Positions 1-48,773 of a stretch of 64,000 nt of DNA are shown here, piece by piece. The notes beneath the pieces were generated by a model. That model searched no databases, was not told where the DNA came from, and saw only the letters and a program-made list of their open reading frames with translations. Within the stretch, counting starts at the first letter, position 1; the number at the start of each line of letters is the position of its first letter. The stretch covers positions 310,001 through 374,000 of the forward strand of contig JANJGN010000052.1 of assembly GCA_026770705.1 (NCBI GenBank). The letters run 5' to 3'. The position numbers and the translations under genes were made by a program. This DNA comes from Isurus oxyrinchus (lineage: Eukaryota).

Positions 1-303
1 CTATAGAAATGCGAATCTTTCTTTTGTCGATATGTAAAACTGTCAAACAGGGTTAGGGAGATCGATGGGAGTGGATAACCTGATAACATTGATGGACACA
101 GTCAATACTTTTAATCATTGATATTAAAGTGAGTATTAGAGGTTGCTTTAGGACTGAACTGGAAGCTATCACCAGGTTATTGAGAATCAGACAGTGTGCT
201 ATAATAAGCTGTGTTTTGTGTTAATATGTAAACGTCACAGTTTGCGTTATTTCCCATTGAGTGTTGAATGTGAATTGTTGAGTAATTATAACACAGCACT
301 TAC

Positions 304-672
304 CAGAAACGTGAAGCTGGGTTACAGGGTAATAGTTATGGCTCGGACCATTGTCAAATTCTATCCTGAAAAAATAAGGTCCTGCATCTTCCCGTCTGAT
401 GTTGTTTATAATCAGGGAACAGTCGCCATCTTTCAGGTTTCCAGACAGCCAGGTCCGATGGTGGAACCGTGGTAACTCGTGACTGTGATCCTTGGAGTGA
501 AAGGCAATGGGAGCCCAGGGAATCTGTTTCTCATTATTAAACCAGAGTCCACCTCGCGGTTGGTTTTCCAGACACGATGGATAACTGTAATGACAAGGAA
601 TCTGTACACACGAACCTTCCTGCGCTGTCACCTCTCGTGGAGTGTCACCGTTCCACTCTTGTGAGGGTTCAA
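304..672 (-). CDS. Gene A Siglec V-set exon V1 (second, internal V domain)
   Basis: TTTCTCTCCCCAG acceptor, GTAAGT donor, 369 nt, phase 1-1. Siglec motifs GSCVQIPCHYSYP and GDCSLIINNIRREDAGPYFFRIE, with the essential Arg in YFFR. Confidence 0.92.
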
Positions 673-734
673 CTGGGGAGAGAAATCTCAATATTTAACT
701 CTGGATGGTTTGTGGATCCACTAGACTCAAATTT

Positions 735-1562
735 ACAGATGAGGCTGAATTGGGGGGATGGTCAATACTGAGGAGGACTACAACAAATTATTTTGGCAGG
801 AAGAATAGAAAAACAGGATATTATTTAAATGGAGAGAGGCTGCTGAATGCAGTACAGAGGGATCTGGGTGTCCTTGTACATGAATCACAGAAAGTCAGCA
901 TTCAGGAACACCACGGAATGAGGAAGGCAAGTGGAACGTTGGCCTTTATTGCAAAGGGATGGAGTATAAAAGGAGGGAAGTCTTGCAACAGCTGCACAGG
1001 GTGAGATTATATCAGGAGCAGTGTGTACAGTTCTGGTCTCCTTACTTAGGGAGGGATAGACTCTGCATTGAAGGCAGTTCAGAGGACGTTCACTGGGCTG
1101 ATTCCTGGGATTAAAGGGTTTGTCCTGTGAGGAAATGTTGAGCAGGTTGGGCCTGTATCCATTGGAGTTTAGAAGAATGAGGGGTGACCTTATAGAAACA
1201 TATCCGATTCCGAGGGGGCTTGACAGGGTGGATGCTGGGAGGATGTTTCCCCCTCGTGGGGGAATCTAGAACCAGGGAGCACAGTTTCGGAATGAGGGCT
1301 CTCCCATTCAAGACTGAGATGAGGAGGAATTTCCTCTCTCAGAGGGGCGCTAGCCTGTGGAATTCTCTTCCCCAGACAGCAGTGGAGGCTGGGCCATTGA
1401 ATAGACTCAAGGCTGAGTGAGGCAGGTTTTTGATCGACAAGGGAGTCAAGGGTTTGGGGGACAGGCAGGAAAATGGAGTTAAGGCCACAACCAGATCAGT
1501 AGAGCAGGCTGGAGGGGCCGAATGGCCTGCTCCTGTCCCTATTTCTTATGTTCCTACATTCT
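735..1562 (+). mobile_element. CR1-type LINE 3' fragment (degenerate)
   Basis: RT C-terminal remnants (QRDLGVLVHES, LGLYPLEFRRMRGDLIETY, RRNFLSQR..LWNSLP) followed by a CR1-like tail. Confidence 0.85.
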
Positions 1563-1633
1563 TACCTTCTTAAAATATTAAAGCTGCAGAATAAACATGC
1601 AAGTGACTGACCCGCTCGACCCACCTTCCATCA

Positions 1634-2520
1634 GGGGCTGGAGGAGGTTACACAGATAGGGAGGTTTGTGGGGGCTGGAGGAGGTAACAGAGATAGGGAG
1701 GGCTGTAGATACTGGAGGAGGTTACGCAGATAGGGAGGGTGGTAGGACCTGGAGGAGGTTGCAGAGATAGGGAGGGCTATAGGGATTTGAGGAGTTTATG
1801 GAGATGGGGAGCGTGTAGGGACTGGAGGAGGCTGCAAGGGCAGAGAAGGTTTTAGGGGCAGGAGGAGTTTACAGGGATAGGAAGAGTTGTAGGGGCTGGA
1901 CGGATTGCAGAGGTAGGGAGGGTTGGAAAGGCTGGTGGAGGTTCCAGAGGTAGGGAAGGTTGCAGGGACTGGAGGAGTTTACAGAGATGGGGGAGTTTTT
2001 GGGGCAGGATGGGGTTACAGAAATAGGGAGGTTTGTAGGGGCAGGACGAGGTTAGATAGATATGGAGTGTGGCTGGGGCTGAGGGAGGCTACAGAGATAG
2101 GGAGGGTTATAATGGCTGGAGGAGGTTACAGAGATAAAGGAAACTCTTAGGGACTGGAGGAGGTTACAGAGATAGGGAGGGTTGTAGTGGGCTGGAGGAG
2201 GTTACAGAAATATGAAGGGTTGTAAGAGATGGAGCAGCTTACAGAGATAGGGAGAGGTATTCGGTCTGAAGGAGGTTGCAGAGATAGGGGAGGTTGTTAG
2301 GACTGAAGGAGGCTACAAATATCGCGAGGGTTATCGGGGCTTGAGGAGGTTAAAGAGATAGGGAGGGGTGTTGGGTCCGGAGGAGTTTGCAGTGATAGGA
2401 ATGGTTTTCGGGATTGGAAGAGAGTACTGAGATAGGAGGGTTGTAGGGACTGGAGGAGGCTCCTGAGATAGGGAATGTTGCCGTGGATGAAGAAAGAGGA
2501 GGAGATTACTGTAATAGGGA
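1634..2520. repeat. Degenerate ~37-bp minisatellite (GGGGCTGGAGGAGGTTACAGAGATAGGGAGGGTTGTA) from an L2-type LINE 3' region
   Basis: Visible periodicity. The same unit occurs at 33890-34180 and inverted at 61960-62265, always next to L2-like sequence. Confidence 0.8.
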
Positions 2521-3530
2521 GGAAAAATATTCAAAAATTGTGACATTGAGACTTTGCTTGACCAGGAGCCAGTCTCGGTCATCGAGCAGAGCGGGTGATA
2601 AGGGAACGGGACTTGGTGTGAGTAAGGACGTGGTCAGCAGTTTTGGATGGCCTCAAGTTTATGGAGTGTAGAGCGTGTGTTGGAACAGTCGAGACTGGAG
2701 GTAATGAAGGCGTGGATGAGGGTTTCAGCAGCAGATGAGCTGAGACAGGGTGACATCGTACAATGTTACGGAGGTGGAAATAGACGGTGTTAGTGAGGGC
2801 GCAGATATGAGGCCGGAAGCTCATCTCAGGATCAAATGGGACAACAAAGCTGTGAACAGATTGGCTTCAATCTCAGAGAGCTGCCAGGGAGAGGAATGGA
2901 GTTGGTAGCGAGGGAACAGAGTTTGGAATGGGGAATGAAGACAATGGCTTCAGTCTTTCCAATATTTAATTGGAGGGAATTTCTGCCCATCCAGTACTGG
3001 ATGTCGGATAAGCAGCCTGATAATTTAGCAGCAGTGGCGGAGTCGAGAGAGGTGGTGGTGAGGTAGAGCTGGGGATCCTCAGTGGACAGATGAAAACTAA
3101 AACTGTTCAGATGATGCTGCAAAGCCATTGCAAGTGATTCTCTGGCTACGATGAGATGGATAAGAATGGAGCCAGGGGAGAGCAGTTCCACCCAGCTGGA
3201 CGACAGTGGAGAGGTGTTGGAGGAGGATGGTGTGGTCGAGCGTGTCAAAGGCTGCAGACAGATCGAGAAGGACGAGGAGGGAAAGTTGACCTTTGTCACA
3301 GTCACACAGGATGCCATTTGTGACCTTGATAAGAGCTGTTTCAGCACAGTGGCTGGGGTGGGAACCTGATTGGAGGGATTCAAACATGGAGATCCGGGAA
3401 AGATGGGAACGGATTCGGGAGATGGAAACACGTTCAAGGACTTTGGAGGGGAAAGAGAGGCTGGAGATGGGACGGGGGTTTACACGGACAGTGTGAGGGG
3501 TGAAAGGTGTAGTGGGGAGGAGATACTTCA
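2520..3530 (-). mobile_element. L2-type LINE RT fragment
   Basis: RPISSLSFPSKVLER, HCAETALIKV, LVLLDLSAAFDT and LQLNIGKTEAI motifs in broken frames. Confidence 0.88.
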
Positions 3531-3751
3531 CTCAGGGGGGAGGTGTCATCACCCCTCAGCTCGGTTTACGTTACAGCTATGATGTGGATTCAATCACACA
3601 CAATAAGCTCATGGATCTGGGAGCAGAAATAGACAAATCATTAAAAATAGTGACGCTGGTTAACACGGCCAAAAAACAAGCAAATCAAACACTATTATTT
3701 CCCATTGAGTGTTGGATGTGAATTGTTGAGTAATTATAACACAGCACTTAC

Positions 3752-4129
3752 CAGAAACCTGAAGCTGGGTTACAGGGTAATAGTTATGGCTTGGACGATT
3801 GCCAAATTTTATCGTGAAAAAATAAGGTCCTGCATCTTCCCGTCTGATGTTGTTTATAATCAGGGAACAGTCGCCATCTTTCAGGTCTCCAGACAGCCGG
3901 GTCCGATGGCGGAACCGTGGTAACTCGTGACTGTGACCCTTGGAGTGAAAGGCTGTAGACCATTTAGACCATTTGTTCCGTATGTAGCTTCTCATTTTCC
4001 AGATTCCGACATGTGGTTTCTTTACCAAATCTGATGGATAACTGTAATGACATGGAATCTGTACACACGAACCTTTCTGCGCTGTCACCTCTCGTGGAGT
4101 GTCACCTTTCCACTCTTGTGACAATCCAA
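3752..4129 (-). CDS. Gene A Siglec V-set exon V2 (N-terminal V; essential Arg replaced by Thr)
   Basis: CAG acceptor, GTAAGT donor, 378 nt, phase 1-1. Open frame with Siglec Cys pattern; YFFT instead of YFFR. Confidence 0.92.
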
Positions 4130-4339
4130 CTGGGGAGAGAAATATCAATATTTAACTCTGGATGTTTTGTTGATCCACAAGACTCATTATCCACCCCCTC
4201 CATCACTCGGGCACAGTGGCTGCAGTGTGGACCATCTACAGGACACACAATGAACTCCACAAGGTATCACACCAGATGGAAGAGAATCCTGGACACAAAA
4301 GCGGAAAAGTTCATTCTACATTGGTTCATGGTCCTCAGG

Positions 4340-5180
4340 ACCCTGTTTGTGCAGAAGTCTGCTCTCCAACAGAACTGAAGTTGGGACAATGCATTTGGAA
4401 TTCCACTGTCCGGGGCATTGGGTTAACTTGCTGATTTTGTTTTGCCTAAAGCAAAATAGGCTTGCGAGAAGCCAGAAGATCCTAGGAGACACCACAGGTT
4501 GGTGACTCATTACTACGGCCATGTGAAGCCATGGTGTTCCATTGACACGGCTGAGCATTGGAGAGACAGGGCGTGGAAGGAAGGCTGAATGCACGTGGCG
4601 ATCCAGGGGGCAGGAACATGGGAAGGAGAGTTTGAAATAGTGAAAGTGGACCCTTGTGGAAGGTGTCTGAGTGAAAGTGTCATGTTGGAGGAGATTCCAA
4701 AGTGAGTTCTTGGAGAGTGGAGATTGGAAACTCTCATATGAAAGAAGCTTTTCAGTGAGACTGGTTGGCTCACAGTGTAACAAGCGTCTGGGGACAGATG
4801 AGACATAGAATTTGTTTCAAGTGGGCTCTGCCACTTGCTTTCAGAATGTGGTGTCCCTGACCACAGGTCGTCTATTGGTTTATATCGACTGTGCACTTAG
4901 TGTGAACATGAGAATATAAGATAGTTATTGTAACTTGTGTTCTACTTATGAATCTGCAAAGGTATAGATCTGGGTGAAGGTGTAATGTAATATAGTTTGT
5001 CTTTCCTAGTTTAATAAATGTTTTATTCTTTTGTTAGAAGATCATCAGATGACTCCTGTGACTCTGTTCAGTAGCCGCACTCCACATTCCTAAATAAAAA
5101 ATAAAAGTTAGGACCTATCAAGCTGAGTTCCACCCTGGGATCTGACTTGCCCAGTAGTAACATCAGCTGGGATGATAACA
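4340..5180 (+). mobile_element. LTR-like remnants (internally deleted relative to 36193-38437)
   Basis: Similar to parts of 36700-36800 and 37695-38437; contains AATAAA and ends in ..GATAACA. Confidence 0.55.
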
Positions 5181-13688: not shown

Positions 13689-14808
13689 CTAGAGAACACA
13701 CAGAAAGAAATCATCACTGACTCTCCGCTTTCAATCTCTCACTGTGTTTGAACAATCAAGCTTCATATCACTGCAACATTTGCTGTAATATTGACTCATC
13801 CACTGGGATTCAATGTGGAATGAATGTTTTCATTGTAAACACTCTAAGAGTGGACAATCGGAACTTTCCCCTTAGCGTGGAACATTGGTGAGAATGGATC
13901 ATTGTGCTGTTGGACTCCCTGTCCAATGTTTCTCTCCATCGCCGTGTACAGGATTGTGCTGTAGAAAATTCTGGAAACGTTTAGTGCAGGGTGGAAATCC
14001 ATCTCGGACGCGTGTGTGATTCGGGCAGGATCGAGATGGACTCCCCCACGGACTTACACCCCCCGCTTAATAAACAGTTCCAATCTTTACCCAGAGAGAG
14101 GGGAGAATGTGGAACTCGCTCCCACTGGGAGTGGTTGAGGTGAGTAGTAGCGAATTAGGAAGTGAAATTGCTTGAAAAGCTGGGAGATGCAAGGGTTAAG
14201 TGCAACCGTGCCACCACTGGTGGGAGAGTGTAACTACAGCATAACGTTTACATAGGCAATCCCCATTATAAACAAGGACATTGGACATCATGTGAAATAT
14301 GTGCACTGGAAAGCTGAGAACATGATGTAAGCTTTTCACCAACAGGAATTCCCTTCCTAAACCTCTCCACCTCTCACTTACTCTCAGATACTCAAACAAA
14401 ATTTCACACAAAATCACATAAGGACGAGTTGGGACAGGTGACTGGTCAAAGGGTTAGGTTTCAGGAAGCTTCTTAAAGGAGGATAGAGAGTTGGAGAGGC
14501 AGAGTGTATCTGTGAGTATCCCTGTGCATCTGAGTGTCTGTAGTAGACTTTGAAATTTCCATATTCTTCCATTAATATGAAAGGGAACACAAATCCCAGA
14601 ATCCAGGTCAACTCTCCGGTGCAACACTGAAGGAGGTCAGGAAACCCACAGGGCACTATGTGATAGTGTATTTGTTTGTGAGTGTGTCTTTGTGTGTGCT
14701 CATAGATGTGGGATTGTGTGTCTGCAGCTGTCTATTTAGGTCTGTATATTTATGTGTGTTTGTGTAGTGTTTGAATCTAAGAGAGATGTTGAAGTCTGTG
14801 TAACTCAC

Positions 14809-14959
14809 GTTCCACAGTGATGGTTATGAACCCCTCCACTGCTCCATGTTCATTCTCTGCCACACACTGATAGTCTCCAGTGTCCATGGATGTAACATGA
14901 GGAATCACCAACCACAGCTCATTGTTGGAACTTGTTCTGTTCATTGGGACATTGAGATG
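14809..14959 (-). pseudogene. Gene B truncated Ig exon (C-terminal half only)
   Basis: ..ELWLVIPHVTSMDTGDYQCVAENEHGAVEGFITITVE with GTGAGT donor. In-frame TGA directly upstream; no in-phase acceptor found. Confidence 0.75.
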
Positions 14960-16894: not shown

Positions 16895-17259
16895 CAGAAA
16901 CATGAAGCTGGGTTACAGGATAGTAGTTGTATCTTTTCCTGCCGTCAAATTCTATCCTGAAAAAATAAGGTCCTGCATCTTCCCGTCTGATGTTGTTTAT
17001 AATCAGGGAACAGTCGCCATCTTTCAGGTCTCCAGACAGCCGGGTCCGATGGTGGAACCATGGTAACTCGTGACTGTGATCCTTGGAGTGAAAGGCAATG
17101 GGAGAACCCAATTTGTGTGTTTCTTTATTAAACCAGATTCCATCTCGTGGTTTGTTTTCCAACTCTACTGGATAACTGTAACGAAATGGAATCTGTACAC
17201 AGATTCCTGCGCTGTCACCTCTCGTGGAGTGTCACCTTTCCACTCTTGTGACAGTCCAA
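16895..17259 (-). pseudogene. Gene B frameshifted V-set exon V3
   Basis: 365 nt versus 369 nt in paralogs (net 4-nt loss near 17210). TAG at 17167-17165, B-strand Cys changed to Phe, splice sites intact. Confidence 0.88.
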
Positions 17260-17419
17260 CTGGGGAGAGAAATATCAATATTTATCCCTGGATCCTCATT
17301 GTTTAATGAATCTCTTTGGATCTTCTTTGTCTAAGGAATCTTTTTGGATCCTCATTGTCTAAGGGATTATTTCTGATCCAAACCCCATATTGTTGTATTG
17401 TTGATTCCGATGCAGCATT

Positions 17420-20335
17420 GTAGACTGACTTGTCCCCCAAAAAACTGTGTATCTCAGCCTTGAATATAATTAATGACCCAGCCTCTGCAGCTCTCTGCGG
17501 TATAGAATTCCACACATTCACTACCCTCTGAGAGAAGAAACTCCTCATCTCTGTCTTAAATGGGTGACCCCTTACTCTGAGATTATGCCCTCTGGTCCTA
17601 GACTCTCCCACAAGGGGAAACAACCTCTCAGCATCTACCCTGTCAAGCACCCTAAGAATCTTATATGTTTCAATAAGGTCAGCTCTCATTCTCCTAAACT
17701 CCAATGAGTACAGGCCCATCCTACTCAACCTCTCCTCATATGAAAATCCCTCCATTACTGGGATCAACCTAGTGAACCTTCTCTGGACTGCCTCCAATGC
17801 CAGTACATCTTTCCTTAGATAAGGGAACCAAAACTGCGCACAGTATTCTAGGTGTGGTCTAACTAGTGCCTTGTATAGTTTTAGCAAGACTTCCCTATTT
17901 TTATACTCCATTCCCTTTGAAATAAAGGCCAACATTCCACCTGCCTTCCCTATTAACTGTTGAACTTGTATGTTATCTTTCTGATGACTCCCAAATTCCT
18001 CTATGCTTCACCTTTCCAATGTCTTTCTCCATTGAAATAATATTCAGCTCCTCTATACATCCTGCCACAGTGCAGCAGCTCACATTTTCCCACATTATAT
18101 TCCATCTGCCAAGTTGATGCCCACTCACTGAACCTGTCTATGTCCCTCTGTAGACTCTTCGTGTCACCCTCACCACTTGCCTTCCCATCTATTTTTGTGT
18201 CATCCGCAAACTTGGCGAAAGTACATTAATTTCCCTCATCCAAGTCATTAATATATATTGTAAATAATTGTGGCCCCAGCACTGATCCCTGTGGCACTCC
18301 ACAGGTTGACATCCTGAAAATGCCCCCCTTATCTCAAATCTCTGTCTTCTCTTAGTTAGTCGATCCTCTTTCCATGCTAATATACTGCCCCCAACACCAT
18401 GGGCTCTTATCTTATTAAGTAGCCTTATATGTGGTACTTTACTGAACGACTTTTGCAAATCCAAATATATTACATCTACTGGTTCCCCTTTATCTATCCT
18501 GTTTGTTACCTCCTCAAATAATTCTAATAAATTTGTCATGCATGATTTCCCCTTCATGAAGCCTATGTTTGTTTAAATTATGCATTTCTAAATAGTCTGC
18601 TATTACATCCTTTATAATGGACTCTAACATGCTCCCAATGACAGATGTTAAGCTAACTGGCCTATAGTTTCCTGTTTGTTGTCTCCCTCCCTTTTTGAAT
18701 ATGGGTGTTACTTTGGCAGATTTCCAATCCTCTGGGAGTTTCCCAGAATCTAAGGATTCTTGGAAGATTAAAACCAGTACATCCACTATCTCTGCATCTA
18801 CTTCCTTTAATATCCTAAAATGCAACCTATCAGGTCCAGGGGACCTATCAGACTTGAGACCCATTAGTTTCGCTAGCGTTATTCTCTAGTGATAGTTACT
18901 GTATTTATTTCCTCTCCCCACCCCCCTTTTGCTCCTTGATTATTTAGTATTTTTGGAATGATATTAGTGTGTTCTACCGTGAAGACTGATGCAAAGTATT
19001 TATTCAACTCCTCTGTCATTTCCTGGTTCCTCATTATTATTTCCCCAGCCTAGTTCTCTAAGGGGCCTATGAACACTTTGGTCTCTCTCTTCCTTTTTAT
19101 ATATTTAAAGGAGCTTTTATTGTCCTTTTTTATATCAATTGCTAGTTTACCTAGTTTTCTCCCTCTTTATTTATTTTTTGGTCATCTTCTGTTGGTTTTT
19201 AAAACTCTCTCAGTCCTCTGGCTTACCACTAATCTTTGTCGTGCTGCATGTTTTTTCCTTCAATTTGATACACACCTTAACTTCTTTGGGTAACCCAGGT
19301 TGGTTTATTCTCTTCCTACAATCCTTCTTTCTCACTGGGATATATCGTTGTTGTGAGTCATGAGCTATTTTCTTAAACATCTGCTATTGTTCATCCACCA
19401 TCTTTTCTGCTAAACCCCTTTCCCAGTCCACTCCAGACAACCCTGTCCTTATTCCTTTGTAATTACACTTATTTAAGTCCAGCACAGTTGTTTCCGACCC
19501 AGGTTTCTCAGTCTCAGAGGGAATGCTAAATTCTACCATGTTATGGTCACTGTTTTCCAGGGGATCATTTATTCTGAGATCATGTATGAAACCTGCCTCA
19601 TTACACATTACCAGATCCAAAATAGCCTGATCCCTGGTTAGATCCACGACATATTATTCCAGGAAACTGTCTTGAATAAACTCAATGAATTCTTGCTCAT
19701 GGCTACCTCTGCCAATTGGGTTTTCCCAATCTACATGAAGATTAATGTACTGCCTTTTTTACATGCCCTCATTATCTCATGATTTATTCTCTGTCCTACA
19801 GCCGAGCTACAGTCATGGGGCTGATAGACCACTCCCACCAGTTCCTTCCTCCACTTGTTATTCATTACCTCGAGCCATATGGATTCTATACCCTCCGATC
19901 CAAGATCATTTCTTGCTTTCGTACTTATTCCATCTCCTATTAACAAAGCTACCACACCACCTTTCCTTCCTGCCTGTCTTTTTGAAAAGTCACATACCCC
20001 TGAATATTTATTTCAAAGCTTTGATCTCCTTGTAACCATGTCTCCATAATGGCTATAAGATCAAACCCATTAACCTCTATTTGTGCCTTTAATTCATTTA
20101 TGTTGTTCCAAATACTATGTGCATTTAAGTCAAGAGCCATTAATTTTGTCTTTTTATCATTTTCCTCCCTCTGACACTATTTGCTGATGTATTTTAATGT
20201 TTGGACACTGTGTACCCACCTGTCACACGCTGGGTATCATCACCAAAACAGCTATCCTGCAATGCTGACAAATCCTTTTGATTTGTAAGCCTACATATAC
20301 CCTCTCCAGAACACTCTCCCCATCTATTTAGTTTA
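17420..20335 (-). mobile_element. Long degenerate CR1-type LINE (APE endonuclease and RT)
   Basis: LNAHSIWN..FDLIAIMETWLQ, KSDRSPGPD, GNYRPVSLTSV, DVIYLDLQKSF and YKALVRPHLEY across several frames. Confidence 0.92.
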
Positions 20336-24055: not shown

Positions 24056-24424
24056 CAGAAACGTGAAGCTGGGTTACAGGGTAATAGTTATGGCTCGGAC
24101 CATTGTCAAATTCTATTCTGAAAAAATAAGGTCCTGCATCTTCCCGTCTGATGTTGTTTATAATCAGGGAACAGTCGCCATCTTTCAGGTCTCCAGACAG
24201 CCGGGTCCGATGGCGGAACCGTGGTAACTCGTGACTGTGATCCTTGGAGTGAAAGGCTATGGGAGCCCAGGGGATCTGTTCCTCATTATTAAACCAGACT
24301 CCACCTCGCGGTTGGCTTTCCAAATGTGCTGGATAACTGTAATGACATGGAATCTGTACACACGAACCTTCCTGCGCTGTCACCTCTCGTGGAGTGTCAC
24401 CTTTCCACTCTTGTGACAGTCCAA
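24056..24424 (-). CDS. Gene B Siglec V-set exon V4 (N-terminal V, Arg intact)
   Basis: 369 nt, phase 1-1, canonical splice sites, YFFRIE motif. Confidence 0.93.
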
Positions 24425-28903: not shown

Positions 28904-29043
28904 TCAAACAGGCTGTCGACTTCCTTTCACTGTTTGTCTCTCCCAGACACAGACTCCAGCGATAGTGATAACCACAGCCACAAGGAATATCACAGCTCGT
29001 ATTCCCAGGATCAGGATCACGTGCAGAATCTCTCCTCCACTGT
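28904..29043 (-). CDS. Gene C TM exon with charged Arg and short tail (activating type)
   Basis: Phase 1: SGGEILHVILILGIRAVIFLVAVVITIAGVCVWERQTVKGSRQPV-stop. Confidence 0.88.
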
Positions 29044-30161
29044 CTAGAGAACACACAGAAAGAAATCATCACTGACTCTCCGCTTTCAATCTCTCACTCT
29101 GGCTGAACAATTAAGCTTCATATCACTGCAACATTTGCTGTAATATTGACCCATCCACTGGGATTCAATGTGGAATGAATGTTTTCATTGTAAACACTCT
29201 AAGAGTGGACAATCGGAACTTTCCCCTTAGCGTGGAACATTGGTGAGAATGGATCATTGTGCTGTTGGACTCCCTGTCCAATGTTTCTCTCCATCGCTCT
29301 GTACAGGATTGTGCTGTAGAAAATTCTGGAAACGTTTAGTGCAGGGTGGAAATCCATCTCGGACGTGTGTGCGAATCGGGCAGGATCGAGATGGACTCCC
29401 CCACGGACTTACACCCCCCGCTTAATAAACAGTTCCAATCTTTACCCAGAGAGAGGGGAGAATGTGGAACTCGCTCCCACAGGGAGTGGTTCAGGTGAGT
29501 AGTAGCAAATTGGGAAGTGAAATTGCTTGAAAAGCTGGGAGATGCAAGGGTTAAGTGCTACCATGCCACCACTGGTGGGAGAGTGTAACTGCAGCGTGAC
29601 GTTTACATAGGCAATCCCCATTATGAACAGGGACATTGGACATCATGTGCAAAATGGGCTCTGGAAAGATGAGAACATGATGTAAGCTTTTCACCAACAG
29701 AAATGTCTTCGTAAACCTCTCCATCTCTCTCTTACTGTCAGATACTCAAACAACATTTCACACAGAATTACATAAGGAGGAGTTGGGACAGGTGACTGGT
29801 CAAAGGGTTAGGTTTCAGGAAGCTTTTTAAAGGAGGATAGAGAGTTAGAGAGGCAGAGAGTATCTGTGAGAATCTCTGTGCATCTGGGTGTCTAATAGAC
29901 TTTGCAATTTCCGCGTTCTTCCATAAACTTGAAAGGGAATACAACTCCCAGAATCCATGTCAACTCTCCGGTGCAGCACTGAGGGAGGTCAGGTAACCCA
30001 TGGGGGAGAATGTGTTAGTGTGTTTGTTTGTGAGTGTGTCCTTTTGTGTGCTCATACATGTGGGATTGTGTGTCTGCACGTGTCTATTTAGGTTTGTATA
30101 ATTGTGTGTGTTTGTTTAGTGTTTGAATCTGAGAGAGCTGTTGAAGTCTGTGTACACTCAC

Positions 30162-30312
30162 ATTCCACAGTGATGGTTATGAAACCCTCCACTGCTCCAT
30201 GATCATTCTCTGCCACACACTGATAGTCTCCAGTGTCCCTGGATGTAACATGAGGAATCACGAACCACAGCTCATTGTTGGAACTTGTTCTGTTCATTGT
30301 GATATTCAGATG
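30162..30312 (-). pseudogene. Gene C truncated Ig exon (C-terminal half only)
   Basis: ..VTSRDTGDYQCVAENDHG..ITVE with GTGAGT donor; in-frame TGA upstream. Confidence 0.75.
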
Positions 30313-30637
30313 TCAGGGCAGGACTCAACATGACAGATCACAGGTTTACCAACAGGAAGTGAACAACAATTTATATTTAATGGGAAGAGAGTGCTGATTG
30401 ATTGGCAAGTGGTCTCTGATTGGAGGCGGTGTTGCCATGGAAAATAATGTGTGCGAGCTGTAAACTTTAGACAGATTGTCTCTTCATTCAGTAATAATCA
30501 TATAAAGATCAGTTAACTTCTATCGACTGTGAAGCACTTTGAGAGGTCTGAGAATGTAGATACTGAGAACGGGCTGCACTGTCAGAGGGTCAGCGCTGAG
30601 GGAGTGCTGATGTAGAATGAAAGGTGTCGGTACTTAC

Positions 30638-30934
30638 CTTGCACAGTTAGTACGAGGGTCCGCTCCGATGAAACAGATGGATATCTCACTCTGCAGCTGA
30701 GAGTGTGTCCGTGGTGTTTGAGTGATGGGATCAGGGTCAGAACAGAAGTATAGGTCAGAGTGACACCATGCTGAGTTACAGTGTTTGAGACTGATCCAGG
30801 TACGTCAGTGGGAGTGTCCCAGGTTAAGACAGGTGCTGCTGTTCCATTGCACGTTGTGTTGAAGGTGCAGCTTACATCCACACACTTTCCTGCTATAATT
30901 TCAGCAGGGAATATCGTGGGTTTATCTGTGAAAT
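30638..30934 (-). CDS. Gene C Siglec C2-set exon
   Basis: 297 nt, phase 1-1, canonical splice sites; extra Cys (GKCVDVSC). Confidence 0.9.
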
Positions 30935-31747
30935 CTAACAGACAGAGAATGGATCCTTTTAGAGAAATATAACGTGAAACATCAGTTCAAATAGAAACCA
31001 CAGTCCCACAAGAGAAAGCACTTTTACAAGGATGATATCAGAACTGAGAGGTTACAATGATCAGGAGAGAATTTCCTAATTTCAGACTTAGTGGAGTTTC
31101 TGTCTCTCAGATGAATTCACTTCCACTTTGAGACAATTGAATTGACAATCCCAGGTGAGGGTGGGGGAGCAGCTCACAGTTCCTGACACACTGGCTTGTT
31201 ACTTTCTCCGAAATCTGCCAGATTAAAATTCTATCCTGTTCCCAGCAGGAGAGAATCCATTTGAACCAATCACTGAACCGGCATCTAAAACAGATGATCA
31301 GGTTATTGATCACATTGCTGTTTCTGGGAGCTTCCTGTGAATAAATTGGCTGCTGTGTGTCCCATATTACAACAAGGGCAACATTTCAAGAATTATTTCA
31401 TTGGTTGTGAATCCATTTGCAACGTACAGAGGTGTTGAACGGCGCTATAGAAATGCAAATCTTTCTTTTGTCGATATGTAAGACTGTCATACAGGGTTAG
31501 GGAGATCGATGGGAGTGGATAACCTGATAACATTGATGGACACAGTCAATACATTTAATCATTCATGTTAAAGTGAGTAGTAGAGGTTGCTTTAGGACTG
31601 AACTGGAAGCTATCACCAGGTTATTGAGAATCAGACAGTGTGTTATAATAAGCCGTGTTTTGTGTTAATATGTAAGCGTCACAGTTTGTGTTATTTCCCA
31701 TTGAGTGTTGAATGTGAATTGTTGAGTAATTATAACACAGCACTTAC

Positions 31748-32116
31748 CAGAAACGTGAAGCTGGGTTACAGGGTAATAGTTATGGCTCGGACCATTGTCA
31801 AATTCTATTCTGAAAAAATAAGGTCCTGCATCTTCCCGTCTTACGTTGTTTATAATCAGGGAACAGTCGCCATCTTTCAGGTCTCCAGACAGCCGGGTCC
31901 GATGGTGGAACCGTGGTAACTCGTGACTGTGATCCTCGGAGTGAAAGGCAATGGGAGCCCAGGGAATCTGATTCTCATTATTAAACCAGACTCCACCTCG
32001 CGGTTGGTTTTCCAGACACGATGGATAACTGTAATGACATGGAATCTGTACACACGAACCTTCCTGCGCTGTCACCTCTCGTGGAGTGTCACCTTTCCAC
32101 TCTTGTGACAGTCCAA
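31748..32116 (-). CDS. Gene C Siglec V-set exon V5 (second, internal V)
   Basis: 369 nt, phase 1-1, YFFRIE; extra Cys in YPSCL. Confidence 0.93.
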
Positions 32117-32178
32117 CTGGGGAGAGAAATATCAATATTTAACTCTGGATGGTTTGTGGATCCACTAGACTCAAATTT

Positions 32179-33000
32179 ACAGATGAGGCTGAATTGGGGG
32201 GATGGTCAATACTGAGGAGGACTACAACAAATTATTTTGGCATGAAGAATAGAAAAACAGGATATTATTTAAATGGAGAGAGGCTGCAGAATGCAGTACA
32301 GAGGGATCTGGGTGTCCTTGTACATGAATCACAGAAAGTCAGCATTCACGGAATGAGGAAGGCAAGTGGAATGTTGGCCTTTATTGCAAAGGGATGGAGT
32401 ATAAAAGGAGGGAAGTCTTGCAACAGCTGCACAGGGTGAGATTGTATCAGGAGCAGTGTGTACAGTTCTGGTCTCATTACTTAGGGAGGGATAGACTCTG
32501 CATTGGAGGCAGTTCAGAGGAGGTTCACTGGGCTGATTCCTGGGATGAAGGGGGTTTGTCCTGTGAGGAAATGTTGAGCAGGTTGGGCCTGTATCCATTG
32601 GAGTTTAGAAGAATGAGGGGTGACCTTATTGAAACATATCTGATTCCGAGGGGGCTTGACAGGGTGGATGCTGGGAGGATGTTTCCCCCTCGTGGGGGAA
32701 TCTAGAACCAGGGAGCACAGTTTCGGAATGAGGGCTCTCCCATTTAAGACTGAGATGAGGAGGAATTTCCTCTCTCAGAGGGGCGCTAGCCTGTGGAATT
32801 CTCTTCCCCAGAGAGCAGTGGAGGCTGGGCCATTGAATAGACTCAAGGCTGAGTGAGGCAGGTTTTTGATCGACAAGGGAGTCAAGGGTTTGGGGGACAG
32901 GCAGGAAAATGGAGTTAAGGCCACAACCAGATCAGTGAGAGCAGGCTGGAGGGGCCGAATGGCCTGCTCCTGTCCCTATTTCTTATGTTCCTACATTCTT
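32179..33000 (+). mobile_element. CR1-type LINE 3' fragment
   Basis: Paralog of 735-1562. Confidence 0.85.
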
Positions 33001-33074
33001 ACCTTCTTAAAATTTTAAAGCTGCAGAATAAACATGCAAGTGACTGACCCGCTCGACCCACCTTCCATCTGGGG

Positions 33075-33460
33075 GTCCCATGGGGAGGACCCTTCCTGAG
33101 CCAGATCCACCAGCCAACATGGTCTGGATCCGAGCACAGGAGACACGGTGGGGAGTGACTAACAGGCTCCTTGTGACAGGCCCCATCTGTCCAATGGCTG
33201 GCTTTCAGCTGCCAAGGCCAGAGTGGTCCTTGCTAAAACCGGCTCAGGACAGGCCAGGACCCCTGTGCAGACCCCCTCCAGCGCTGCAGCCTCTGTACAA
33301 ACCCCTCATGCGCTTGTGGAGAGACACAAACAAGGCTGCGCATTACCGAGGAGAATCCCCTCTACGGACTAAGGTGCTGACTCATCACCTTAAACTCCGC
33401 AAATGAGGAGGCTCTCGCTCGGTATCGGGGCTTGGCATTCGCTCAATAAAAATAATCAAA
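33075..33460 (+). mobile_element. RTE-like LINE 3' fragment
   Basis: GFQLPRPEWSLL followed by frameshifted RLRTG, then an A-rich tail; absent from the gene A intron. Confidence 0.5.
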
Positions 33461-33539
33461 TTACATTTTGGTCAGAAATCTAAGGAGGTTGTACATTCCC
33501 TCAAAAATAAGACTCGAGCTGGGGTCTAGGGTCAAAGGG

Positions 33540-35195
33540 CAACAACTTATATTTACACAACAACTTGAACATGACAAATCACCCCAAGGTGCTACACAGG
33601 AGTGTCATAAAACAAAGTATGTCACCCAGACACATGTGGAGATATTAGCGATAGCTGACCAGAAGAGGTCGGTGTTATGGAGAATCTTCAAAGGGGGATG
33701 AAATGGATAGTGAGAGAGAGACAGAGCGATAGAGAGAGTGAGAGAGAGGGACGGAGAGGGGTTGAGGGAGGGTATTACAGAGCTCGGGTCCCAGGCAGCT
33801 GAAGGCACGGCCGCCGATGTTGGAGTGATGGGATCGGGGGATGGTCAAGAGGCTGGAATTGGAGGAGAGCAGAGACCTCAGAGGGTTGGAGGGGCTGGAG
33901 GAGGTTACAGAGATAGGGAGGGTTGTAGGGGCTGGAGGAGTTACAGAGATAGGGAGGGTTGTAGGGGCTGGAAAATTTAAGAGAGATTGGGAGAGTGTAG
34001 GGTATGGAGGAGTTCGCAGAGCTAGGGAGGGTTGTAGTGGCTGGAGGAGGTTGCAGAGATTGGTAGGTTTGTTGGGCAGGATGAATTTACAGATATAGGG
34101 AAGCGGTAGAGGCTTGAAGAGGTTACAGAGAATGGGATGGTTGTAGGTACTGGAGGAGGACGAGAAGATTACAGAGATAGTGAGGAAACAAAGATGAAAA
34201 TTTGGACGTTGACATTTTGCTTGACCAGGAGCCAGTCTCGGTCATCGAGCAGAGCGGGTGATAAGGGAACGGGACTTGGTGTGAGTAAGGACGTGGTCAG
34301 CAGTTTTGGATGGCCTCAAGTTTATGGAGTGTAGAGCGTGTGTTGGAACAGTCGAGACTGGAGGTAATGAAGGCATGGATGAGGGTTTCAGCAGCAGATG
34401 AGCTGAGACAGGGTGATGTCGTGCGATGTTATGGAGGTGGAAATAGACGGTGTTAGTGAGGGCGCAGATATGAGGCCGGAAGCTCATCTCAGGATCAAAT
34501 GGGACAACAAAGCTGTGAACAGATTGGCTTCAATCTCAGAGACCTGCCAGGGAGAGGAATGGAGTTGGTAGCGAGGGAACAGAGTTTGGAGTGGGGAATG
34601 AAGACAATGGCTTCAGTCTTTCCAATATTTAATTGGAGGGAATTTCTGCCCATCCAGTACTGGATGTCGGATAAGCAGCCTGATAATTTAGCAGCAGTGG
34701 AGGAGTCGAGAGAGGTGGTGGTGAGGTAGAGCTGGGGATCCTCAGTGGACAGGTGAAAACTAACACTGTTCAGATGATGCTGCAAAGCCATTGCAAGTGA
34801 TTCTCTGGCTACGATGAGATGGATAAGAATGGAGCCAGGGGAGAGCAGTCCCACCCAGCTGGACGACAGTGGAGAGGGGTTGGAGGAGGATGGTGTGGTC
34901 GAGCGTGTCAAAGGCTGCAGACAGATCGAGAAGGACGAGGAGGGAAAGTTGACCTTTGTCACAGTCACACAGGATGCCATTTGTGACCTTGATAAGAGCT
35001 GTTTCAGCACAGTGGCTGGGGTGGGAACCTGATTGGAGGGATTCAAACATGGAGTTCCGGGAAAGATGGGAAAGGATTTGGGAGATGGAAACACGTTCAA
35101 GGACTTTGCGGGGGAAAGAGAGGCTGGAGATGGGACGGGAGTTTACACGGACAGTGTGAGGGGTGGAAGGTGTAGCGGGGAGGAGACACTTCACT
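33540..35195 (-). mobile_element. L2-type LINE fragment with internal 37-bp tandem expansion
   Basis: LVLLDLSAAFDT motif; paralog of 1634-3530. Confidence 0.85.
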
Positions 35196-35414
35196 CAGGG
35201 GGGAGGTGTCATCACCCCTCAGCTCGGTTTACGTTACAGCTTTGATGTGGATTCAATCACACACAATAAGCTCATGGATCTGGGAGCAGAAATAGACAAA
35301 TCATTAAAAATAGTGACGCTGGTTACCACGGCCAAAAAACAAGCAAATCAAACACTATTATTTCCCATTGAGTGTTGGATGTGAATTGTTGAGTAATTAT
35401 AACACAGCACTTAC

Positions 35415-35789
35415 CAGAAACGTGAAGCTGGGTTTCAGGACGCTCGTTGTATCTATTCCTGCTGTCAAAATCTGTTCTGAATAAATAATATCCTGCATCT
35501 TCCCATCTGACATTGTTTATAATCAGGGAACAGTCACCATCTTTCAGGTCTCCAGACAGCCAGGTCCGATGGTGGAACCGTGTTAACTTGCGATTGTGAT
35601 TCTTGGAGTGAAAGGCTATAGACCGTTCATTCCATGTTTCCCAATTCCTTCTCATATACCAGATTCCGACTGGTGATCTCGCTACTAAATATGATGGATA
35701 ACTGTAATTACATGGAATCTGTACACACGAACCTTCCTGCGCTGTCACCTCTCGTGGAGTGTTGACTTTCCACACTTGTGATAGTCCAA
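35415..35789 (-). CDS. Gene C Siglec V-set exon V6 (N-terminal, divergent V)
   Basis: TAG acceptor, GTAAGT donor, 375 nt, phase 1-1. DAGYYLFRTDF retains the Arg. Confidence 0.92.
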
Positions 35790-36192
35790 CTACGGAGAGA
35801 AATATCAATATTTAACTCTGAATGTTTTCTCAATCCACTATACTCAATATCCACCCCCTCCATCACTGGGGCACAGTGGCTGCAGTCTGGATAATCCACA
35901 GGTCACACAATGAATGCCCCAAGGTTTTACCACAGATCGAAGAGAATTCTGGACACAGGAGTGGACAAGTTCATTCTACATTGGCTCATGGCCCTCAGGA
36001 ACCTATTTAGTGAAGTCAGTCTGCCACCCAACATAGTGTCTACAAGACGCACTGATTGAAGTGAGTTCACTGCTGATTTACAATGTAGGACAATGGATTT
36101 GGAGCCTTCAGAATTCCCCCATTATCACCATCATGAATCACTAATTGGCCTAGCTGTCCTAGATCCTCAGTGTCTAATGCAGTGGTTCCTAT

Positions 36193-41802: not shown

Positions 41803-41842
41803 CTTGGAGAAGCGACAGGAGGAAGTAAGATTTCCCGATCAT
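41803..41842 (-). CDS. Gene C leader exon, coding part
   Basis: MIGKSYFLLSLLQ+G, GTAATA donor, upstream TTTCTCTTTCAG acceptor. Confidence 0.88.
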
Positions 41843-44291: not shown

Positions 44292-44560
44292 NNNNNNNNN
44301 NNNNNNNNNNNNNNNNNNNNNNNNNNNNNNNNNNNNNNNNNNNNNNNNNNNNNNNNNNNNNNNNNNNNNNNNNNNNNNNNNNNNNNNNNNNNNNNNNNNN
44401 NNNNNNNNNNNNNNNNNNNNNNNNNNNNNNNNNNNNNNNNNNNNNNNNNNNNNNNNNNNNNNNNNNNNNNNNNNNNNNNNNNNNNNNNNNNNNNNNNNNN
44501 NNNNNNNNNNNNNNNNNNNNNNNNNNNNNNNNNNNNNNNNNNNNNNNNNNNNNNNNNNNN
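44292..44560. other. Assembly gap
   Basis: Run of N. Confidence 1.
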
Positions 44561-48140: not shown

Positions 48141-48363
48141 NNNNNNNNNNNNNNNNNNNNNNNNNNNNNNNNNNNNNNNNNNNNNNNNNNNNNNNNNNNN
48201 NNNNNNNNNNNNNNNNNNNNNNNNNNNNNNNNNNNNNNNNNNNNNNNNNNNNNNNNNNNNNNNNNNNNNNNNNNNNNNNNNNNNNNNNNNNNNNNNNNNN
48301 NNNNNNNNNNNNNNNNNNNNNNNNNNNNNNNNNNNNNNNNNNNNNNNNNNNNNNNNNNNNNNN
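48141..48363. other. Assembly gap
   Basis: Run of N. Confidence 1.
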
Positions 48364-48580: not shown

Positions 48581-48773
48581 NNNNNNNNNNNNNNNNNNNN
48601 NNNNNNNNNNNNNNNNNNNNNNNNNNNNNNNNNNNNNNNNNNNNNNNNNNNNNNNNNNNNNNNNNNNNNNNNNNNNNNNNNNNNNNNNNNNNNNNNNNNN
48701 NNNNNNNNNNNNNNNNNNNNNNNNNNNNNNNNNNNNNNNNNNNNNNNNNNNNNNNNNNNNNNNNNNNNNNNNN
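48581..48773. other. Assembly gap
   Basis: Run of N. Confidence 1.

What the first reader, a model, noticed from the sequence alone, without database searches (positions are those of the whole stretch)
31748..35789. Tandem V-V ectodomain with an extra Cys found only in internal V domains
Seen: genes A and C each have two V exons after one leader. The internal ones (V1 codon 574-572, V5 codon 32018-32016) read CHYSYPSC. The others have H (V4), D (V2), Y (V6) or E (V3) there, although V4 is otherwise very close to V1/V5. Known: the first V-domain Cys (GSCV) bonds to a B-C loop Cys of domain 2 (here CTFNTTC). Inference: the internal V gained a Cys at nearly the same position (7 versus 6 residues after the B-strand Cys), restoring the interdomain disulfide. 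That points to a real disulfide-linked V-V-C2 receptor. Two V domains are known in Siglec-12, so this would be a separate origin.
Basis: partly seen in the sequence, partly recalled or inferred. Interest (0 to 1): 0.85.

Follow-up and report, generated by a model that had tools for sequence, protein, structure and literature searches.

The report
Shark double-headed Siglec, extra cysteine
Two shark immune-receptor genes of the sialic-acid-sensing Siglec family carry two sugar-binding "head" exons in a row. The second head has one extra cysteine that, across sharks and rays, occurs only in heads that sit behind another head, so the two heads are probably stapled together by a disulfide bond, though the bond itself is not shown.

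Summary
The minus strand holds three leaders and six V-set exons of a Siglec/CD22-like cluster. Genes A (V2-V1) and C (V6-V5) each have two phase 1-1 V exons after one leader. Only the inner exons V1 and V5 read CHYSYPSC.

New evidence:
- Contigs of runs guessed to be RNA, probably from the same species, contain a V-donor to V-acceptor joint (35415 to 32116) and a V5-to-C2 joint. The V exons are therefore not only mutually exclusive.
- Among 119 non-redundant elasmobranch V domains, this Cys is in 28 of 38 internal domains and 0 of 81 first or sole domains.
- AU tests reject a single clade for the Cys-bearing domains, so the Cys follows position rather than descent alone.
- Cys parity fits: 3+4+3 across V-V-C2.

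The disulfide itself stays inferred. The AlphaFold2 model of a great-white-shark relative has a low-confidence V-V linker, and no coordinates were available. RefSeq already predicts such 2-4-V proteins, auto-named Siglec-12, -8 or -13. I found no paper on them.

Mammalian Siglec-12 lacks this Cys, so the shark arrangement has a separate origin.

The scan found the same rule before on other DNA of this genome (s1-870795, s1-865395). My tests agree with those notes.

Verdict: a new variant of a known kind, of moderate interest.

The parts
41803..41842 (-). Gene C leader exon, coding part (MIGKSYFLLSLLQ + first base of next codon); GT donor at 41802-41801
   Evidence: The same leader is joined to V-exon starts in RNA-like contigs (loose ends at 32118).
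35415..35789 (-). V6: outer (first) V-set exon of gene C, phase 1-1. Reads GSCV..IPC..DCS (3 Cys), Tyr at the position of the extra Cys, Arg kept in YLFR
   Evidence: (Pfam V-set 1.2e-13, Ig_CD22 1.4e-09). The exon is covered by RNA-like contigs.
31748..32116 (-). V5: inner V-set exon of gene C, phase 1-1, 4 Cys, essential Arg in YFFR
   Evidence: Joints 35415->32116 and 31748->30934.
32016..32018 (-). TGT codon of the extra Cys (position 33 of the V domain, 7 residues after the B-strand Cys)
30638..30934 (-). First C2-set exon of gene C, with CTFNTTC (B-strand Cys plus the B-C-loop Cys that accepts the Siglec interdomain disulfide)
   Evidence: (C2-set_2 2.2e-08). Spliced to V5 in 3 runs.
28904..29043 (-). 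Transmembrane exon of gene C with an Arg in the membrane span (LGIRAVIF) and a short Tyr-free tail, i.e. an activating-type end. Assignment to gene C is by colinearity and by the great-white-shark model P0175
8547..8586 (-). Gene A leader exon, coding part
3752..4129 (-). V2: outer V-set exon of gene A. Asp at position 33; Thr replaces the essential Arg (YFFT)
304..672 (-). V1: inner V-set exon of gene A, with the extra Cys (codon 574-572). The rest of gene A lies beyond the window start
24056..24424 (-). V4: sole V exon of gene B (leader at about 25326-25287, placed by homology). Comparison case: 94% identical to V5 but reads Ala-His where V5 reads Ser-Cys
16895..17259 (-). V3: V pseudo-exon without its own leader. 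It has a 4-nt deletion and the B-strand Cys replaced by Phe

Best explanation
Genes A and C encode Siglec-type receptors whose ectodomain starts with two V-set (sialic-acid-binding type) domains in tandem, followed by a C2 domain. Gene C most likely ends in an activating-type transmembrane segment with an Arg in the membrane span.

The inner V arose by duplication of a roughly 490-bp V-exon unit. In ordinary Siglecs the Cys at the start of the V-domain B strand (GSCV) is disulfide-bonded to a B-C-loop Cys of the next domain (CTFNTTC in the C2 exon). When a V domain became the next domain, it needed an acceptor. The Cys in CHYSYPSC sits in the B-C loop, at the N-terminal end of the inner V that faces the outer V. 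It most likely accepts the outer V's GSCV Cys, and the inner V's own GSCV Cys keeps the bond to C2. This would give a rigid, stapled V-V-C2 stalk.

Shown:
- the exon anatomy;
- V-to-V and V-to-C2 splice joints in RNA-like contigs;
- the strict restriction of this Cys to non-first V domains in sharks and rays;
- that this pattern is not explained by single descent.

Inferred: the bond itself and its partner.
For: - Anatomy: three leaders for six V exons, all V exons phase 1-1 with intact splice sites.
- Transcripts: joints with GT..AG ends for V6 donor to V5 acceptor (runs X1 and X2) and V5 donor to C2 acceptor (X1-X3), absent from the DNA-like run X16. No V6-to-C2 joint is among those listed.
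- Relatives: RefSeq models with 2-4 tandem V domains in Scyliorhinus, Mustelus, Cetorhinus, Carcharodon, Chiloscyllium, Hemiscyllium, Rhincodon, Hypanus, Mobula and Hemitrygon.
- Position rule: Cys33 is in 28 of 38 non-redundant internal V domains and 0 of 81 first or sole V domains. Fisher p = 3.5e-19, not corrected for kinship.
- Not simple descent: AU tests reject one clade for all Cys33 domains (p 0.0003) and for the shark ones alone (p 0.00035).
- V4 against V5: 94% identical, yet 5 of about 14 exon differences fall in the 9 nt around this codon, and TGT to CAT needs two changes.
- Parity: the outer V has 3 Cys, the inner V 4 and C2 3, so the total is even only with the extra Cys.
- Topology: the B-C loop of a V domain lies at its N-terminal end, where the preceding domain attaches (Ig-fold knowledge). 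The spacing is 7 residues against 6 in C2.
- The canonical V-C2 disulfide is real and needed in Siglec-6, where it joins Cys46 and Cys172 (PMC10122656).
- Fold: the model of the great-white-shark protein P0170 matches CD33, MAG and Siglec-10.
Against: - No structural or chemical evidence for the bond. The AlphaFold2 model of P0170 has pTM 0.53 and pLDDT below 50 in the V-V linker (141-147), and no coordinates were available.
- The joint contigs have only 20-28 letters on the shorter side, below the tool's own 31-letter rule. V-exon ends are nearly identical among paralogues, so the joint shows V-to-V splicing in this family rather than in this locus specifically.
- The runs hold only 26-36% of the sampled V6 words, and the V6-like contig shown differs by 4%.
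- Leader joined directly to a V5-like start is also seen. This could be gene B or V6 skipping.
- 10 of 38 internal V domains lack Cys33. Two of these (P0151 d2, P0166 d2) have no fourth Cys at all.
- Ray domains carry a fourth Cys in the C-C' loop instead, at the opposite end of the domain, which does not fit a simple single rule.
- V-V Siglec-like models in tree shrew, turtles and frogs have no acceptor Cys, so a free GSCV Cys may be tolerated.
- The tree is poorly resolved (121 columns). Only 3 phylogenetically independent contrasts sit on supported branches, and the sign test is not significant.
Confidence: 0.55

Rival explanations
1. The V-V receptor is real and the extra Cys is functional, but its partner is not the outer V's first Cys. 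It might form an inter-chain disulfide (a covalent dimer) or pair with another loop Cys, while the outer V's GSCV Cys stays free or is capped.
For: - In rays the fourth Cys of internal domains 2 and 4 sits in the C-C' loop (position 48), at the far end of the domain. Extra cysteines in stacked V domains therefore do not all sit in an acceptor position.
- V-V models in tree shrew Siglec-12, turtles and frogs lack any acceptor.
- The AlphaFold2 linker is unconfident.
Against: - A dimerising Cys has no reason to be absent from all 81 first or sole V domains.
- The 3+4+3 parity and the location in the B-C loop, beside the attachment point of the preceding domain, fit an intrachain staple.
Confidence: 0.2
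2. V6 and V5 (and V2 and V1) are mainly alternative first exons, or the outer exons are decaying. The V-V form would then be a minor or unproductive isoform, and the Cys would be incidental.
For: - Leader-to-V5-like junction contigs are seen in X2 and X3.
- V5-like exons have about 20 times the depth of V6 in X3, though paralogues pile up there.
- The outer V exons evolve with dN/dS of about 0.9.
- V2 lacks the essential Arg.
Against: - The V-to-V joint has a depth (84-92) close to the V6 exon depth (about 120-190) in the same runs. No V6-to-C2 joint is listed.
- V6 and V2 keep their reading frames, all three canonical Cys and their splice sites, unlike the truly decayed V3.
- Outer-V counterparts are kept in great white and basking shark models.
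- The leader-to-V5-like contigs are explained equally well by gene B, whose V4 start is identical.
Confidence: 0.15
3. The link between the Cys and internal position is only shared ancestry. One ancestral inner V exon happened to carry a Cys, which is neutrally retained.
For: - Within the window V1 and V5 are copies from one block duplication.
- The tree forces only at least 3 changes on well-supported branches, and the independent-pairs test is not significant.
Against: - AU tests reject a single clade.
- Inner V domains group with first V domains of their own taxon, for example V5 and V1 with V4 and the Mustelus inner domains with Mustelus outer ones. The rest of the exon has therefore been exchanged or re-duplicated while the Cys stayed tied to position.
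- An unpaired extracellular Cys is rarely neutral (general protein knowledge).
Confidence: 0.1

Closest known systems
Mammalian Siglec-12 (Siglec-XII in humans): the known Siglec with two V-set domains (PMC6288428)
   Same: It has two tandem V-set domains ahead of the C2 domains, and RefSeq auto-names many of the shark models 'Siglec-12'. In both, one of the two V domains can lose the essential Arg (V2 here; R122C in human).
   Different: The origins are independent. Shark inner and outer V domains are 63-78% identical to each other, while Rhinopithecus and Tupaia Siglec-12 are 34-39% identical to the V5 query. Their second V domain has no B-C-loop Cys: Tupaia has 3 Cys, and Rhinopithecus has an extra one in the C-C' loop. 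The shark genes lie in a cluster next to hepcidin according to scan note s1-863611. By my own knowledge of the human map that would suggest the MAG/CD22 neighbourhood rather than the CD33-related cluster. I did not test this.
Canonical V-C2 Siglecs with the interdomain disulfide (CD33 5IHB, MAG 5LFR, Siglec-10 9O6N; Siglec-6 Cys46-Cys172)
   Same: - The V-set motif G-x-C-x4-C is the same, as is the B-E intrasheet Cys pair.
- The F-strand Arg and the C2 motif C-x5-C are also shared.
- The best structural matches of the model are CD33, MAG and Siglec-10.
   Different: Here a second V domain is inserted between the V and C2 domains. The acceptor Cys is re-created in a V-domain B-C loop at +7 instead of +6.
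RefSeq gene models of elasmobranch 'Siglec-8/10/12/13/14, CD33-like, MAG-like' proteins (e.g. XP_038670873 Scyliorhinus canicula, XP_078389734 Cetorhinus maximus, XP_059815055 Hypanus sabinus)
   Same: They belong to the same family, have 2-4 tandem V domains, and carry the same Cys in non-first V domains.
   Different: They are automatic predictions with borrowed mammalian names. No paper in the searched library describes them or the position-specific Cys.
Activating Siglecs with a charged transmembrane residue (Siglec-14, -15, -16)
   Same: The transmembrane exon assigned to gene C has an Arg in the membrane span and a short tail without Tyr.
   Different: No adaptor pairing has been tested. 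The ectodomain has two V domains.

Membership tests
Siglec family (sialic acid-binding Ig-like lectins) | N-terminal V-set Ig domain | tested here: met
   Pfam V-set (E 1e-11 to 1e-13) and Ig_CD22 first-domain model (E 1e-7 to 1e-9), above the curated cut-offs for V1, V2, V4, V5 and V6.
Siglec family (sialic acid-binding Ig-like lectins) | Unusual intrasheet B-E disulfide pair, plus a third Cys at the start of strand B | tested here: met
   Cys at domain positions 21, 26 and 84 in all five intact V exons and in 117 of the 119 non-redundant relatives (P0051, whose d1 and d2 lack Cys21, is among the distant vertebrate proteins, not this set). The bonds themselves were not observed.
Siglec family (sialic acid-binding Ig-like lectins) | Essential Arg on strand F (Y-x-F-R) | tested here: met
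   Present in V6, V5, V4 and V1. Replaced by Thr in V2.
Siglec family (sialic acid-binding Ig-like lectins) | C2-set domain 2 with a B-C-loop Cys (C-x5-C) for the interdomain disulfide | tested here: met
   CTFNTTC in the exon 30934-30638; Pfam C2-set_2 E 2.2e-08.
Siglec family (sialic acid-binding Ig-like lectins) | Fold resembles solved Siglec ectodomains | tested here: met
   Foldseek on the model of relative P0170 gives CD33 5IHB (E 4e-18, TMt 0.71), MAG 5LFR and Siglec-10 9O6N. The window's own spliced product was not modelled.
Siglec family (sialic acid-binding Ig-like lectins) | Binds sialylated glycans | not testable with these tools
   Needs glycan-array or cell-binding assays.
Orthologue of mammalian Siglec-12 | The two V-set domains descend from the same duplication as in mammals | tested here: not met
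   - Shark inner V domains group with shark first V domains.
- Primate and tree-shrew Siglec-12 are only 34-39% identical to V5.
- Their second V domain lacks the B-C-loop Cys.
   GSCV in V6 and V2; CHYSYPSC in V5 and V1.
   V-donor to V-acceptor joint in 2 RNA-like runs. It is weak by the tool's 31-letter rule and cannot be assigned to one paralogue.
   28 of 38 internal against 0 of 81 first or sole V domains. A single clade is rejected.
   In the AlphaFold2 model the linker has pLDDT below 50 and pTM is 0.53. No coordinates were handed out.
   Needs mass-spectrometric disulfide mapping.

The most novel reading that the evidence does not exclude
Elasmobranch Siglecs may use a modular stapling rule. 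Any V domain placed behind another V domain acquires or keeps one acceptor cysteine: Cys33 in sharks and rays, and a C-C'-loop Cys in alternate ray domains. This would let chains of two to four lectin heads be built as rigid, disulfide-linked rods. Gene conversion homogenises the V exons while selection holds this single codon to its position. That would be an independent, structurally different route to multi-headed Siglecs from mammalian Siglec-12. It would also be a natural example of how Ig-domain order is encoded in one residue.
Probability: 0.35. Interest if true: 0.7.

Novelty: new variant of a known kind. Interest (0 to 1): 0.55.

Why it matters
Siglecs are the main vertebrate sensors of sialic acid as a marker of self. 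Their ectodomain plan, one V head stapled to a C2 stalk, is treated as fixed, with mammalian Siglec-12 as the odd exception.

A cartilaginous-fish lineage that repeatedly builds 2-4-headed Siglecs would do three things:
- It would show how domain duplication is accommodated structurally, since a compensating cysteine appears exactly in the non-first heads.
- It would give a testable case of position-specific selection against a background of concerted evolution.
- It would point to rigid, multivalent or dual-specificity lectin heads in early jawed-vertebrate immunity.

The finding also warns that the RefSeq names for these genes (Siglec-12, -8, -13) do not reflect orthology.

Tried and rejected
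- **Leader position.** My first guess for gene C's leader, a hydrophobic ORF at about 37780-37700, was wrong. RNA-contig loose ends and a pattern search place the true leader at 41842-41803.
- **Complex prediction.** Outer V against inner V plus C2 of P0170 returned "no answer" (score 0.00). This is no evidence either way.
- **AlphaFold2 model of P0170.** The domains fold, but the V-V linker is unconfident and no coordinate file is reachable.
- **Joined product not modelled.** Exons were searched one by one by reference, and a database protein stood in for the joined product.
- **Independent pairs.** The test on the tree found only 3 contrasts on supported branches and was not significant.
- **Xenopus.** I considered Xenopus laevis "Siglec-12" as an independent replicate, because its internal V domains show an extra N-terminal Cys. 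Its first V domain has the same Cys, so it is not position-specific and I dropped it.
- **Literature.** Searches for shark or elasmobranch Siglecs found nothing on this point. The library lacks most subscription journals.
- **Sequencing runs.** No run held half of the sampled V6 words, so locus-specific expression of V6 is not shown.
- **N runs.** The runs at 44292-44560, 48141-48363 and 48581-48773 were left untouched.
Full report
**What is in the window.** The minus strand carries a cluster of Siglec/CD22-like genes. A tblastn of the V5 exon against the window finds six V-set exons:
- V6: 35789-35415
- V5: 32116-31748
- V4: 24424-24056
- V3: about 17259-16895
- V2: 4129-3752
- V1: 672-304

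Pfam scores the five intact exons as V-set and as the CD22-like first Ig domain. The exon at 30934-30638 scores as C2-set.

All V exons begin after an AG with two bases of a split codon and end with one base before GT. They are therefore phase 1-1, and any of them can be included or skipped without breaking the frame.

A leader sequence recovered from RNA-contig overhangs occurs only three times, at about 41842-41803, 25326-25287 and 8586-8547. Gene C is therefore L-V6-V5-C2..., gene B is L-V4-C2..., and gene A is L-V2-V1 and then runs off the window.

V3 has no leader of its own. It carries a 4-nt deletion and a Phe in place of the B-strand Cys, so it is a pseudo-exon.

Downstream of gene C's C2 exon lies a transmembrane exon (29043-28904) with an Arg in the membrane span and a short tail. 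A great-white-shark model (P0175) joins the equivalent exons directly.

**The observation.** The inner exons V5 and V1 read CHYSYPSC, with TGT at 32018-32016 and 574-572. The same codon is CAT in V4, GAT in V2, TAT in V6 and GAG in V3. The C2 exon reads CTFNTTC.

There is one caveat. The V6-V5 unit (31445-36033) is colinear with the V2-V1 unit (1-4371), at 97% identity around the inner V and 89% around the outer V. The two Cys-bearing exons in this window are therefore copies of one event.

**Are both V exons in one transcript?** No run held half of the sampled V6 words. The best were three small runs from one sample, labelled as a guess at RNA. I laid their contigs, and those of one large run of another organism label, on 30560-36100.

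Intron contigs match at about 99%, so the sample is probably the same species.

Joints with CT..AC ends on the plus strand, which are GT..AG on the gene's strand, link two pairs of exons:
- 31748 to 30934 (V5 donor to C2 acceptor) in all three runs;
- 35415 to 32116 (V6 donor to V5 acceptor) in two of them, at depth 84-92. This is close to the V6 exon depth in those runs (about 120-190).

The large run shows neither joint and looks like DNA. No V6-to-C2 joint is among those listed, although many joints were not shown.

Limits of this evidence:
- The shorter side of the V-V joint is only 20-28 letters.
- V-exon ends are almost identical among paralogues.
- A V6-like contig differs from the window by 4%.

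The result therefore shows V-to-V splicing in this gene family in this or a very close species. It does not show it strictly for this locus.

Contigs joining the leader directly to a V5-like start also exist. Gene B (L-V4) explains them as well as V6 skipping does.

**Relatives.** A full HMMER scan with V5 and a word-indexed search returned 217 proteins. The close ones are all RefSeq or UniProt predictions from sharks and rays, auto-named Siglec-8, -10, -12, -13, -14, CD33-like or MAG-like.

Models with two to four tandem V domains occur in Scyliorhinus canicula and S. torazame, Mustelus asterias, Cetorhinus maximus, Carcharodon carcharias, Chiloscyllium punctatum, Hemiscyllium ocellatum, Rhincodon typus, Hypanus sabinus, Mobula hypostoma and Hemitrygon akajei.

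I cut out every V domain with a profile built from the window's exons and read the residue aligned to the extra Cys, position 33. The counts among 119 non-redundant domains are:

| Domain position | With Cys33 | Total |
|---|---|---|
| Internal | 28 | 38 |
| First or sole | 0 | 81 |

Fisher p is 3.5e-19, uncorrected for kinship.

Of the ten internal domains without Cys33:
- seven, in ray domains 2 and 4, have a fourth Cys at position 48 in the C-C' loop;
- one has it at position 70 and one at position 108;
- two have none.

First or sole V domains have only scattered extra cysteines, never at 33 or 48.

**Descent or selection?** I built a maximum-likelihood tree of the domains with column 33 left out. 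It is poorly resolved, but it places inner V domains with first V domains of their own taxon. Examples are V5 and V1 with V4 and great-white inner domains, Mustelus inner with Mustelus outer domains, and ray domain 3 with ray domain 1.

AU tests reject the best tree in which all Cys33 domains form one clade (lnL difference 139, p 0.0003). They also reject the tree in which the shark ones alone form one clade (lnL difference 112, p 0.00035).

So either the Cys was gained repeatedly, or gene conversion has homogenised V exons while the Cys stayed tied to internal position. Both readings imply selection on the position rule.

The window gives a local example. V4 and V5 differ at about 14 of 369 exon bases, and five of those lie within the nine bases around codon 33.

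The formal independent-contrast test has too few supported contrasts to be significant.

**Is it a disulfide to the outer V?** Several lines support this.
- The canonical Siglec bond joins the first V Cys to a B-C-loop Cys of domain 2. In Siglec-6 this is Cys46-Cys172, and mutating either residue abolishes a binding function (PMC10122656).
- The outer V domains of V-V proteins keep that first Cys.
- The inner V adds one Cys in its own B-C loop, at the N-terminal end of the domain where the outer V attaches.
- The cysteine count is 3+4+3, which is even only with the extra Cys.

Several points count against it, or remain open.
- The AlphaFold2 model of the great-white L-V-V-C2 protein P0170 folds each domain (mean pLDDT 77.5). 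Its pTM is only 0.53, the V-V linker is below pLDDT 50, and no coordinates were available to me.
- The model's best matches are CD33, MAG and Siglec-10, which confirms the fold but not the V-V geometry.
- The ray pattern of alternating Cys48 and Cys33 is not explained by a single simple rule.
- V-V Siglec-like models in tree shrew (Siglec-12), turtles and frogs have no acceptor Cys.

The modelling used a database relative instead.

**Comparison with Siglec-12.** Siglec-12 is the known two-V Siglec (PMC6288428). Rhinopithecus and Tupaia Siglec-12 appeared among the distant hits, at 34-39% identity to V5. Their second V domain has no B-C-loop Cys. Tupaia has three Cys, and Rhinopithecus has an extra one in the C-C' loop.

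Shark inner and outer V domains are 63-78% identical to each other. The shark arrangement is thus an independent origin, and the RefSeq name "Siglec-12" for shark genes is not orthology.

**Novelty and verdict.** The multi-V gene models are already public as automatic predictions. I found no paper on elasmobranch Siglecs or on this cysteine in the searched library.

The same rule was noted and followed up earlier in this scan on other DNA of this genome (s1-870795, s1-865395). My independent tests agree with those notes. They add the splice joints, the AU tests and the Siglec-12 comparison.

My estimates are:
- about 0.8 that a V-V-C2 receptor is really made;
- about 0.55 for the whole explanation, including the V-V disulfide.

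Noticed in passing
window 28904-29043 (-): A transmembrane exon downstream of gene C's C2 exon has an Arg inside the membrane span and a short Tyr-free tail, which is the activating type. The upstream gene D has ITIM- and ITSM-like tail exons (about 58681-58436 and 55500-55255). The cluster may therefore hold paired activating and inhibitory receptors.
   Followed up: partly
window 16895-17259 (-), and 17306-18007 (-): V3 is a V pseudo-exon: it has a 4-nt deletion, the B-strand Cys is Phe, and it has no leader. It sits just downstream of a reverse-transcriptase-like ORF of a LINE. It is followed by intact-looking C2 and transmembrane exons (15631-13500) that are colinear with gene C's 3' half at 93-96%.
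   Followed up: partly
window 30160-30330 (-) and 14780-14959 (-): A second Ig-like exon after the C2 exon is readable only in its C-terminal half (NRTSSNNELW...YQCVAEN). The N-terminal half is in another frame, with stops, in both copies. The great-white model P0175 skips it.
   Followed up: no
window 35415-35789 vs 3752-4129: The outer V exons V6 and V2 differ at about 18% of bases (dN/dS about 0.9). Their flanking introns differ by about 11%. The inner V exons differ by about 4% (dN/dS about 0.6). The outer head evolves much faster than the inner one. V2 has also lost the essential Arg.
   Followed up: partly
P0002, P0155 (Hypanus sabinus), P0164 (Mobula hypostoma): Ray models have four V domains in a row. 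The fourth Cys alternates: C-C' loop (position 48) in domains 2 and 4, B-C loop (position 33) in domain 3. The pairing scheme is unexplained.
   Followed up: partly
window 31691-32174 vs 35358-35847: The duplicated V-exon unit is only about 490 bp: the exon plus about 58 bp on each side, at 82.6% identity. The 3.3-kb intron between V6 and V5 is filled with transposon-derived and tandem-like repeats (e.g. 33880-34190).
   Followed up: no
window 32118 (loose ends): RNA-like contigs join the leader directly to a V5-like exon start. This could be gene B (V4 has an identical start) or a V6-skipping isoform of gene C. The contigs cannot tell them apart.
   Followed up: no
window 35623: One contig in run X2 has a 9-base deletion inside the V6 C-C' loop region, and another V6-like contig differs by 4%. 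These suggest a polymorphic or paralogous outer V exon.
   Followed up: no
window 44292-44560, 48141-48363, 48581-48773: Three runs of N (gaps or masked).
   Followed up: no
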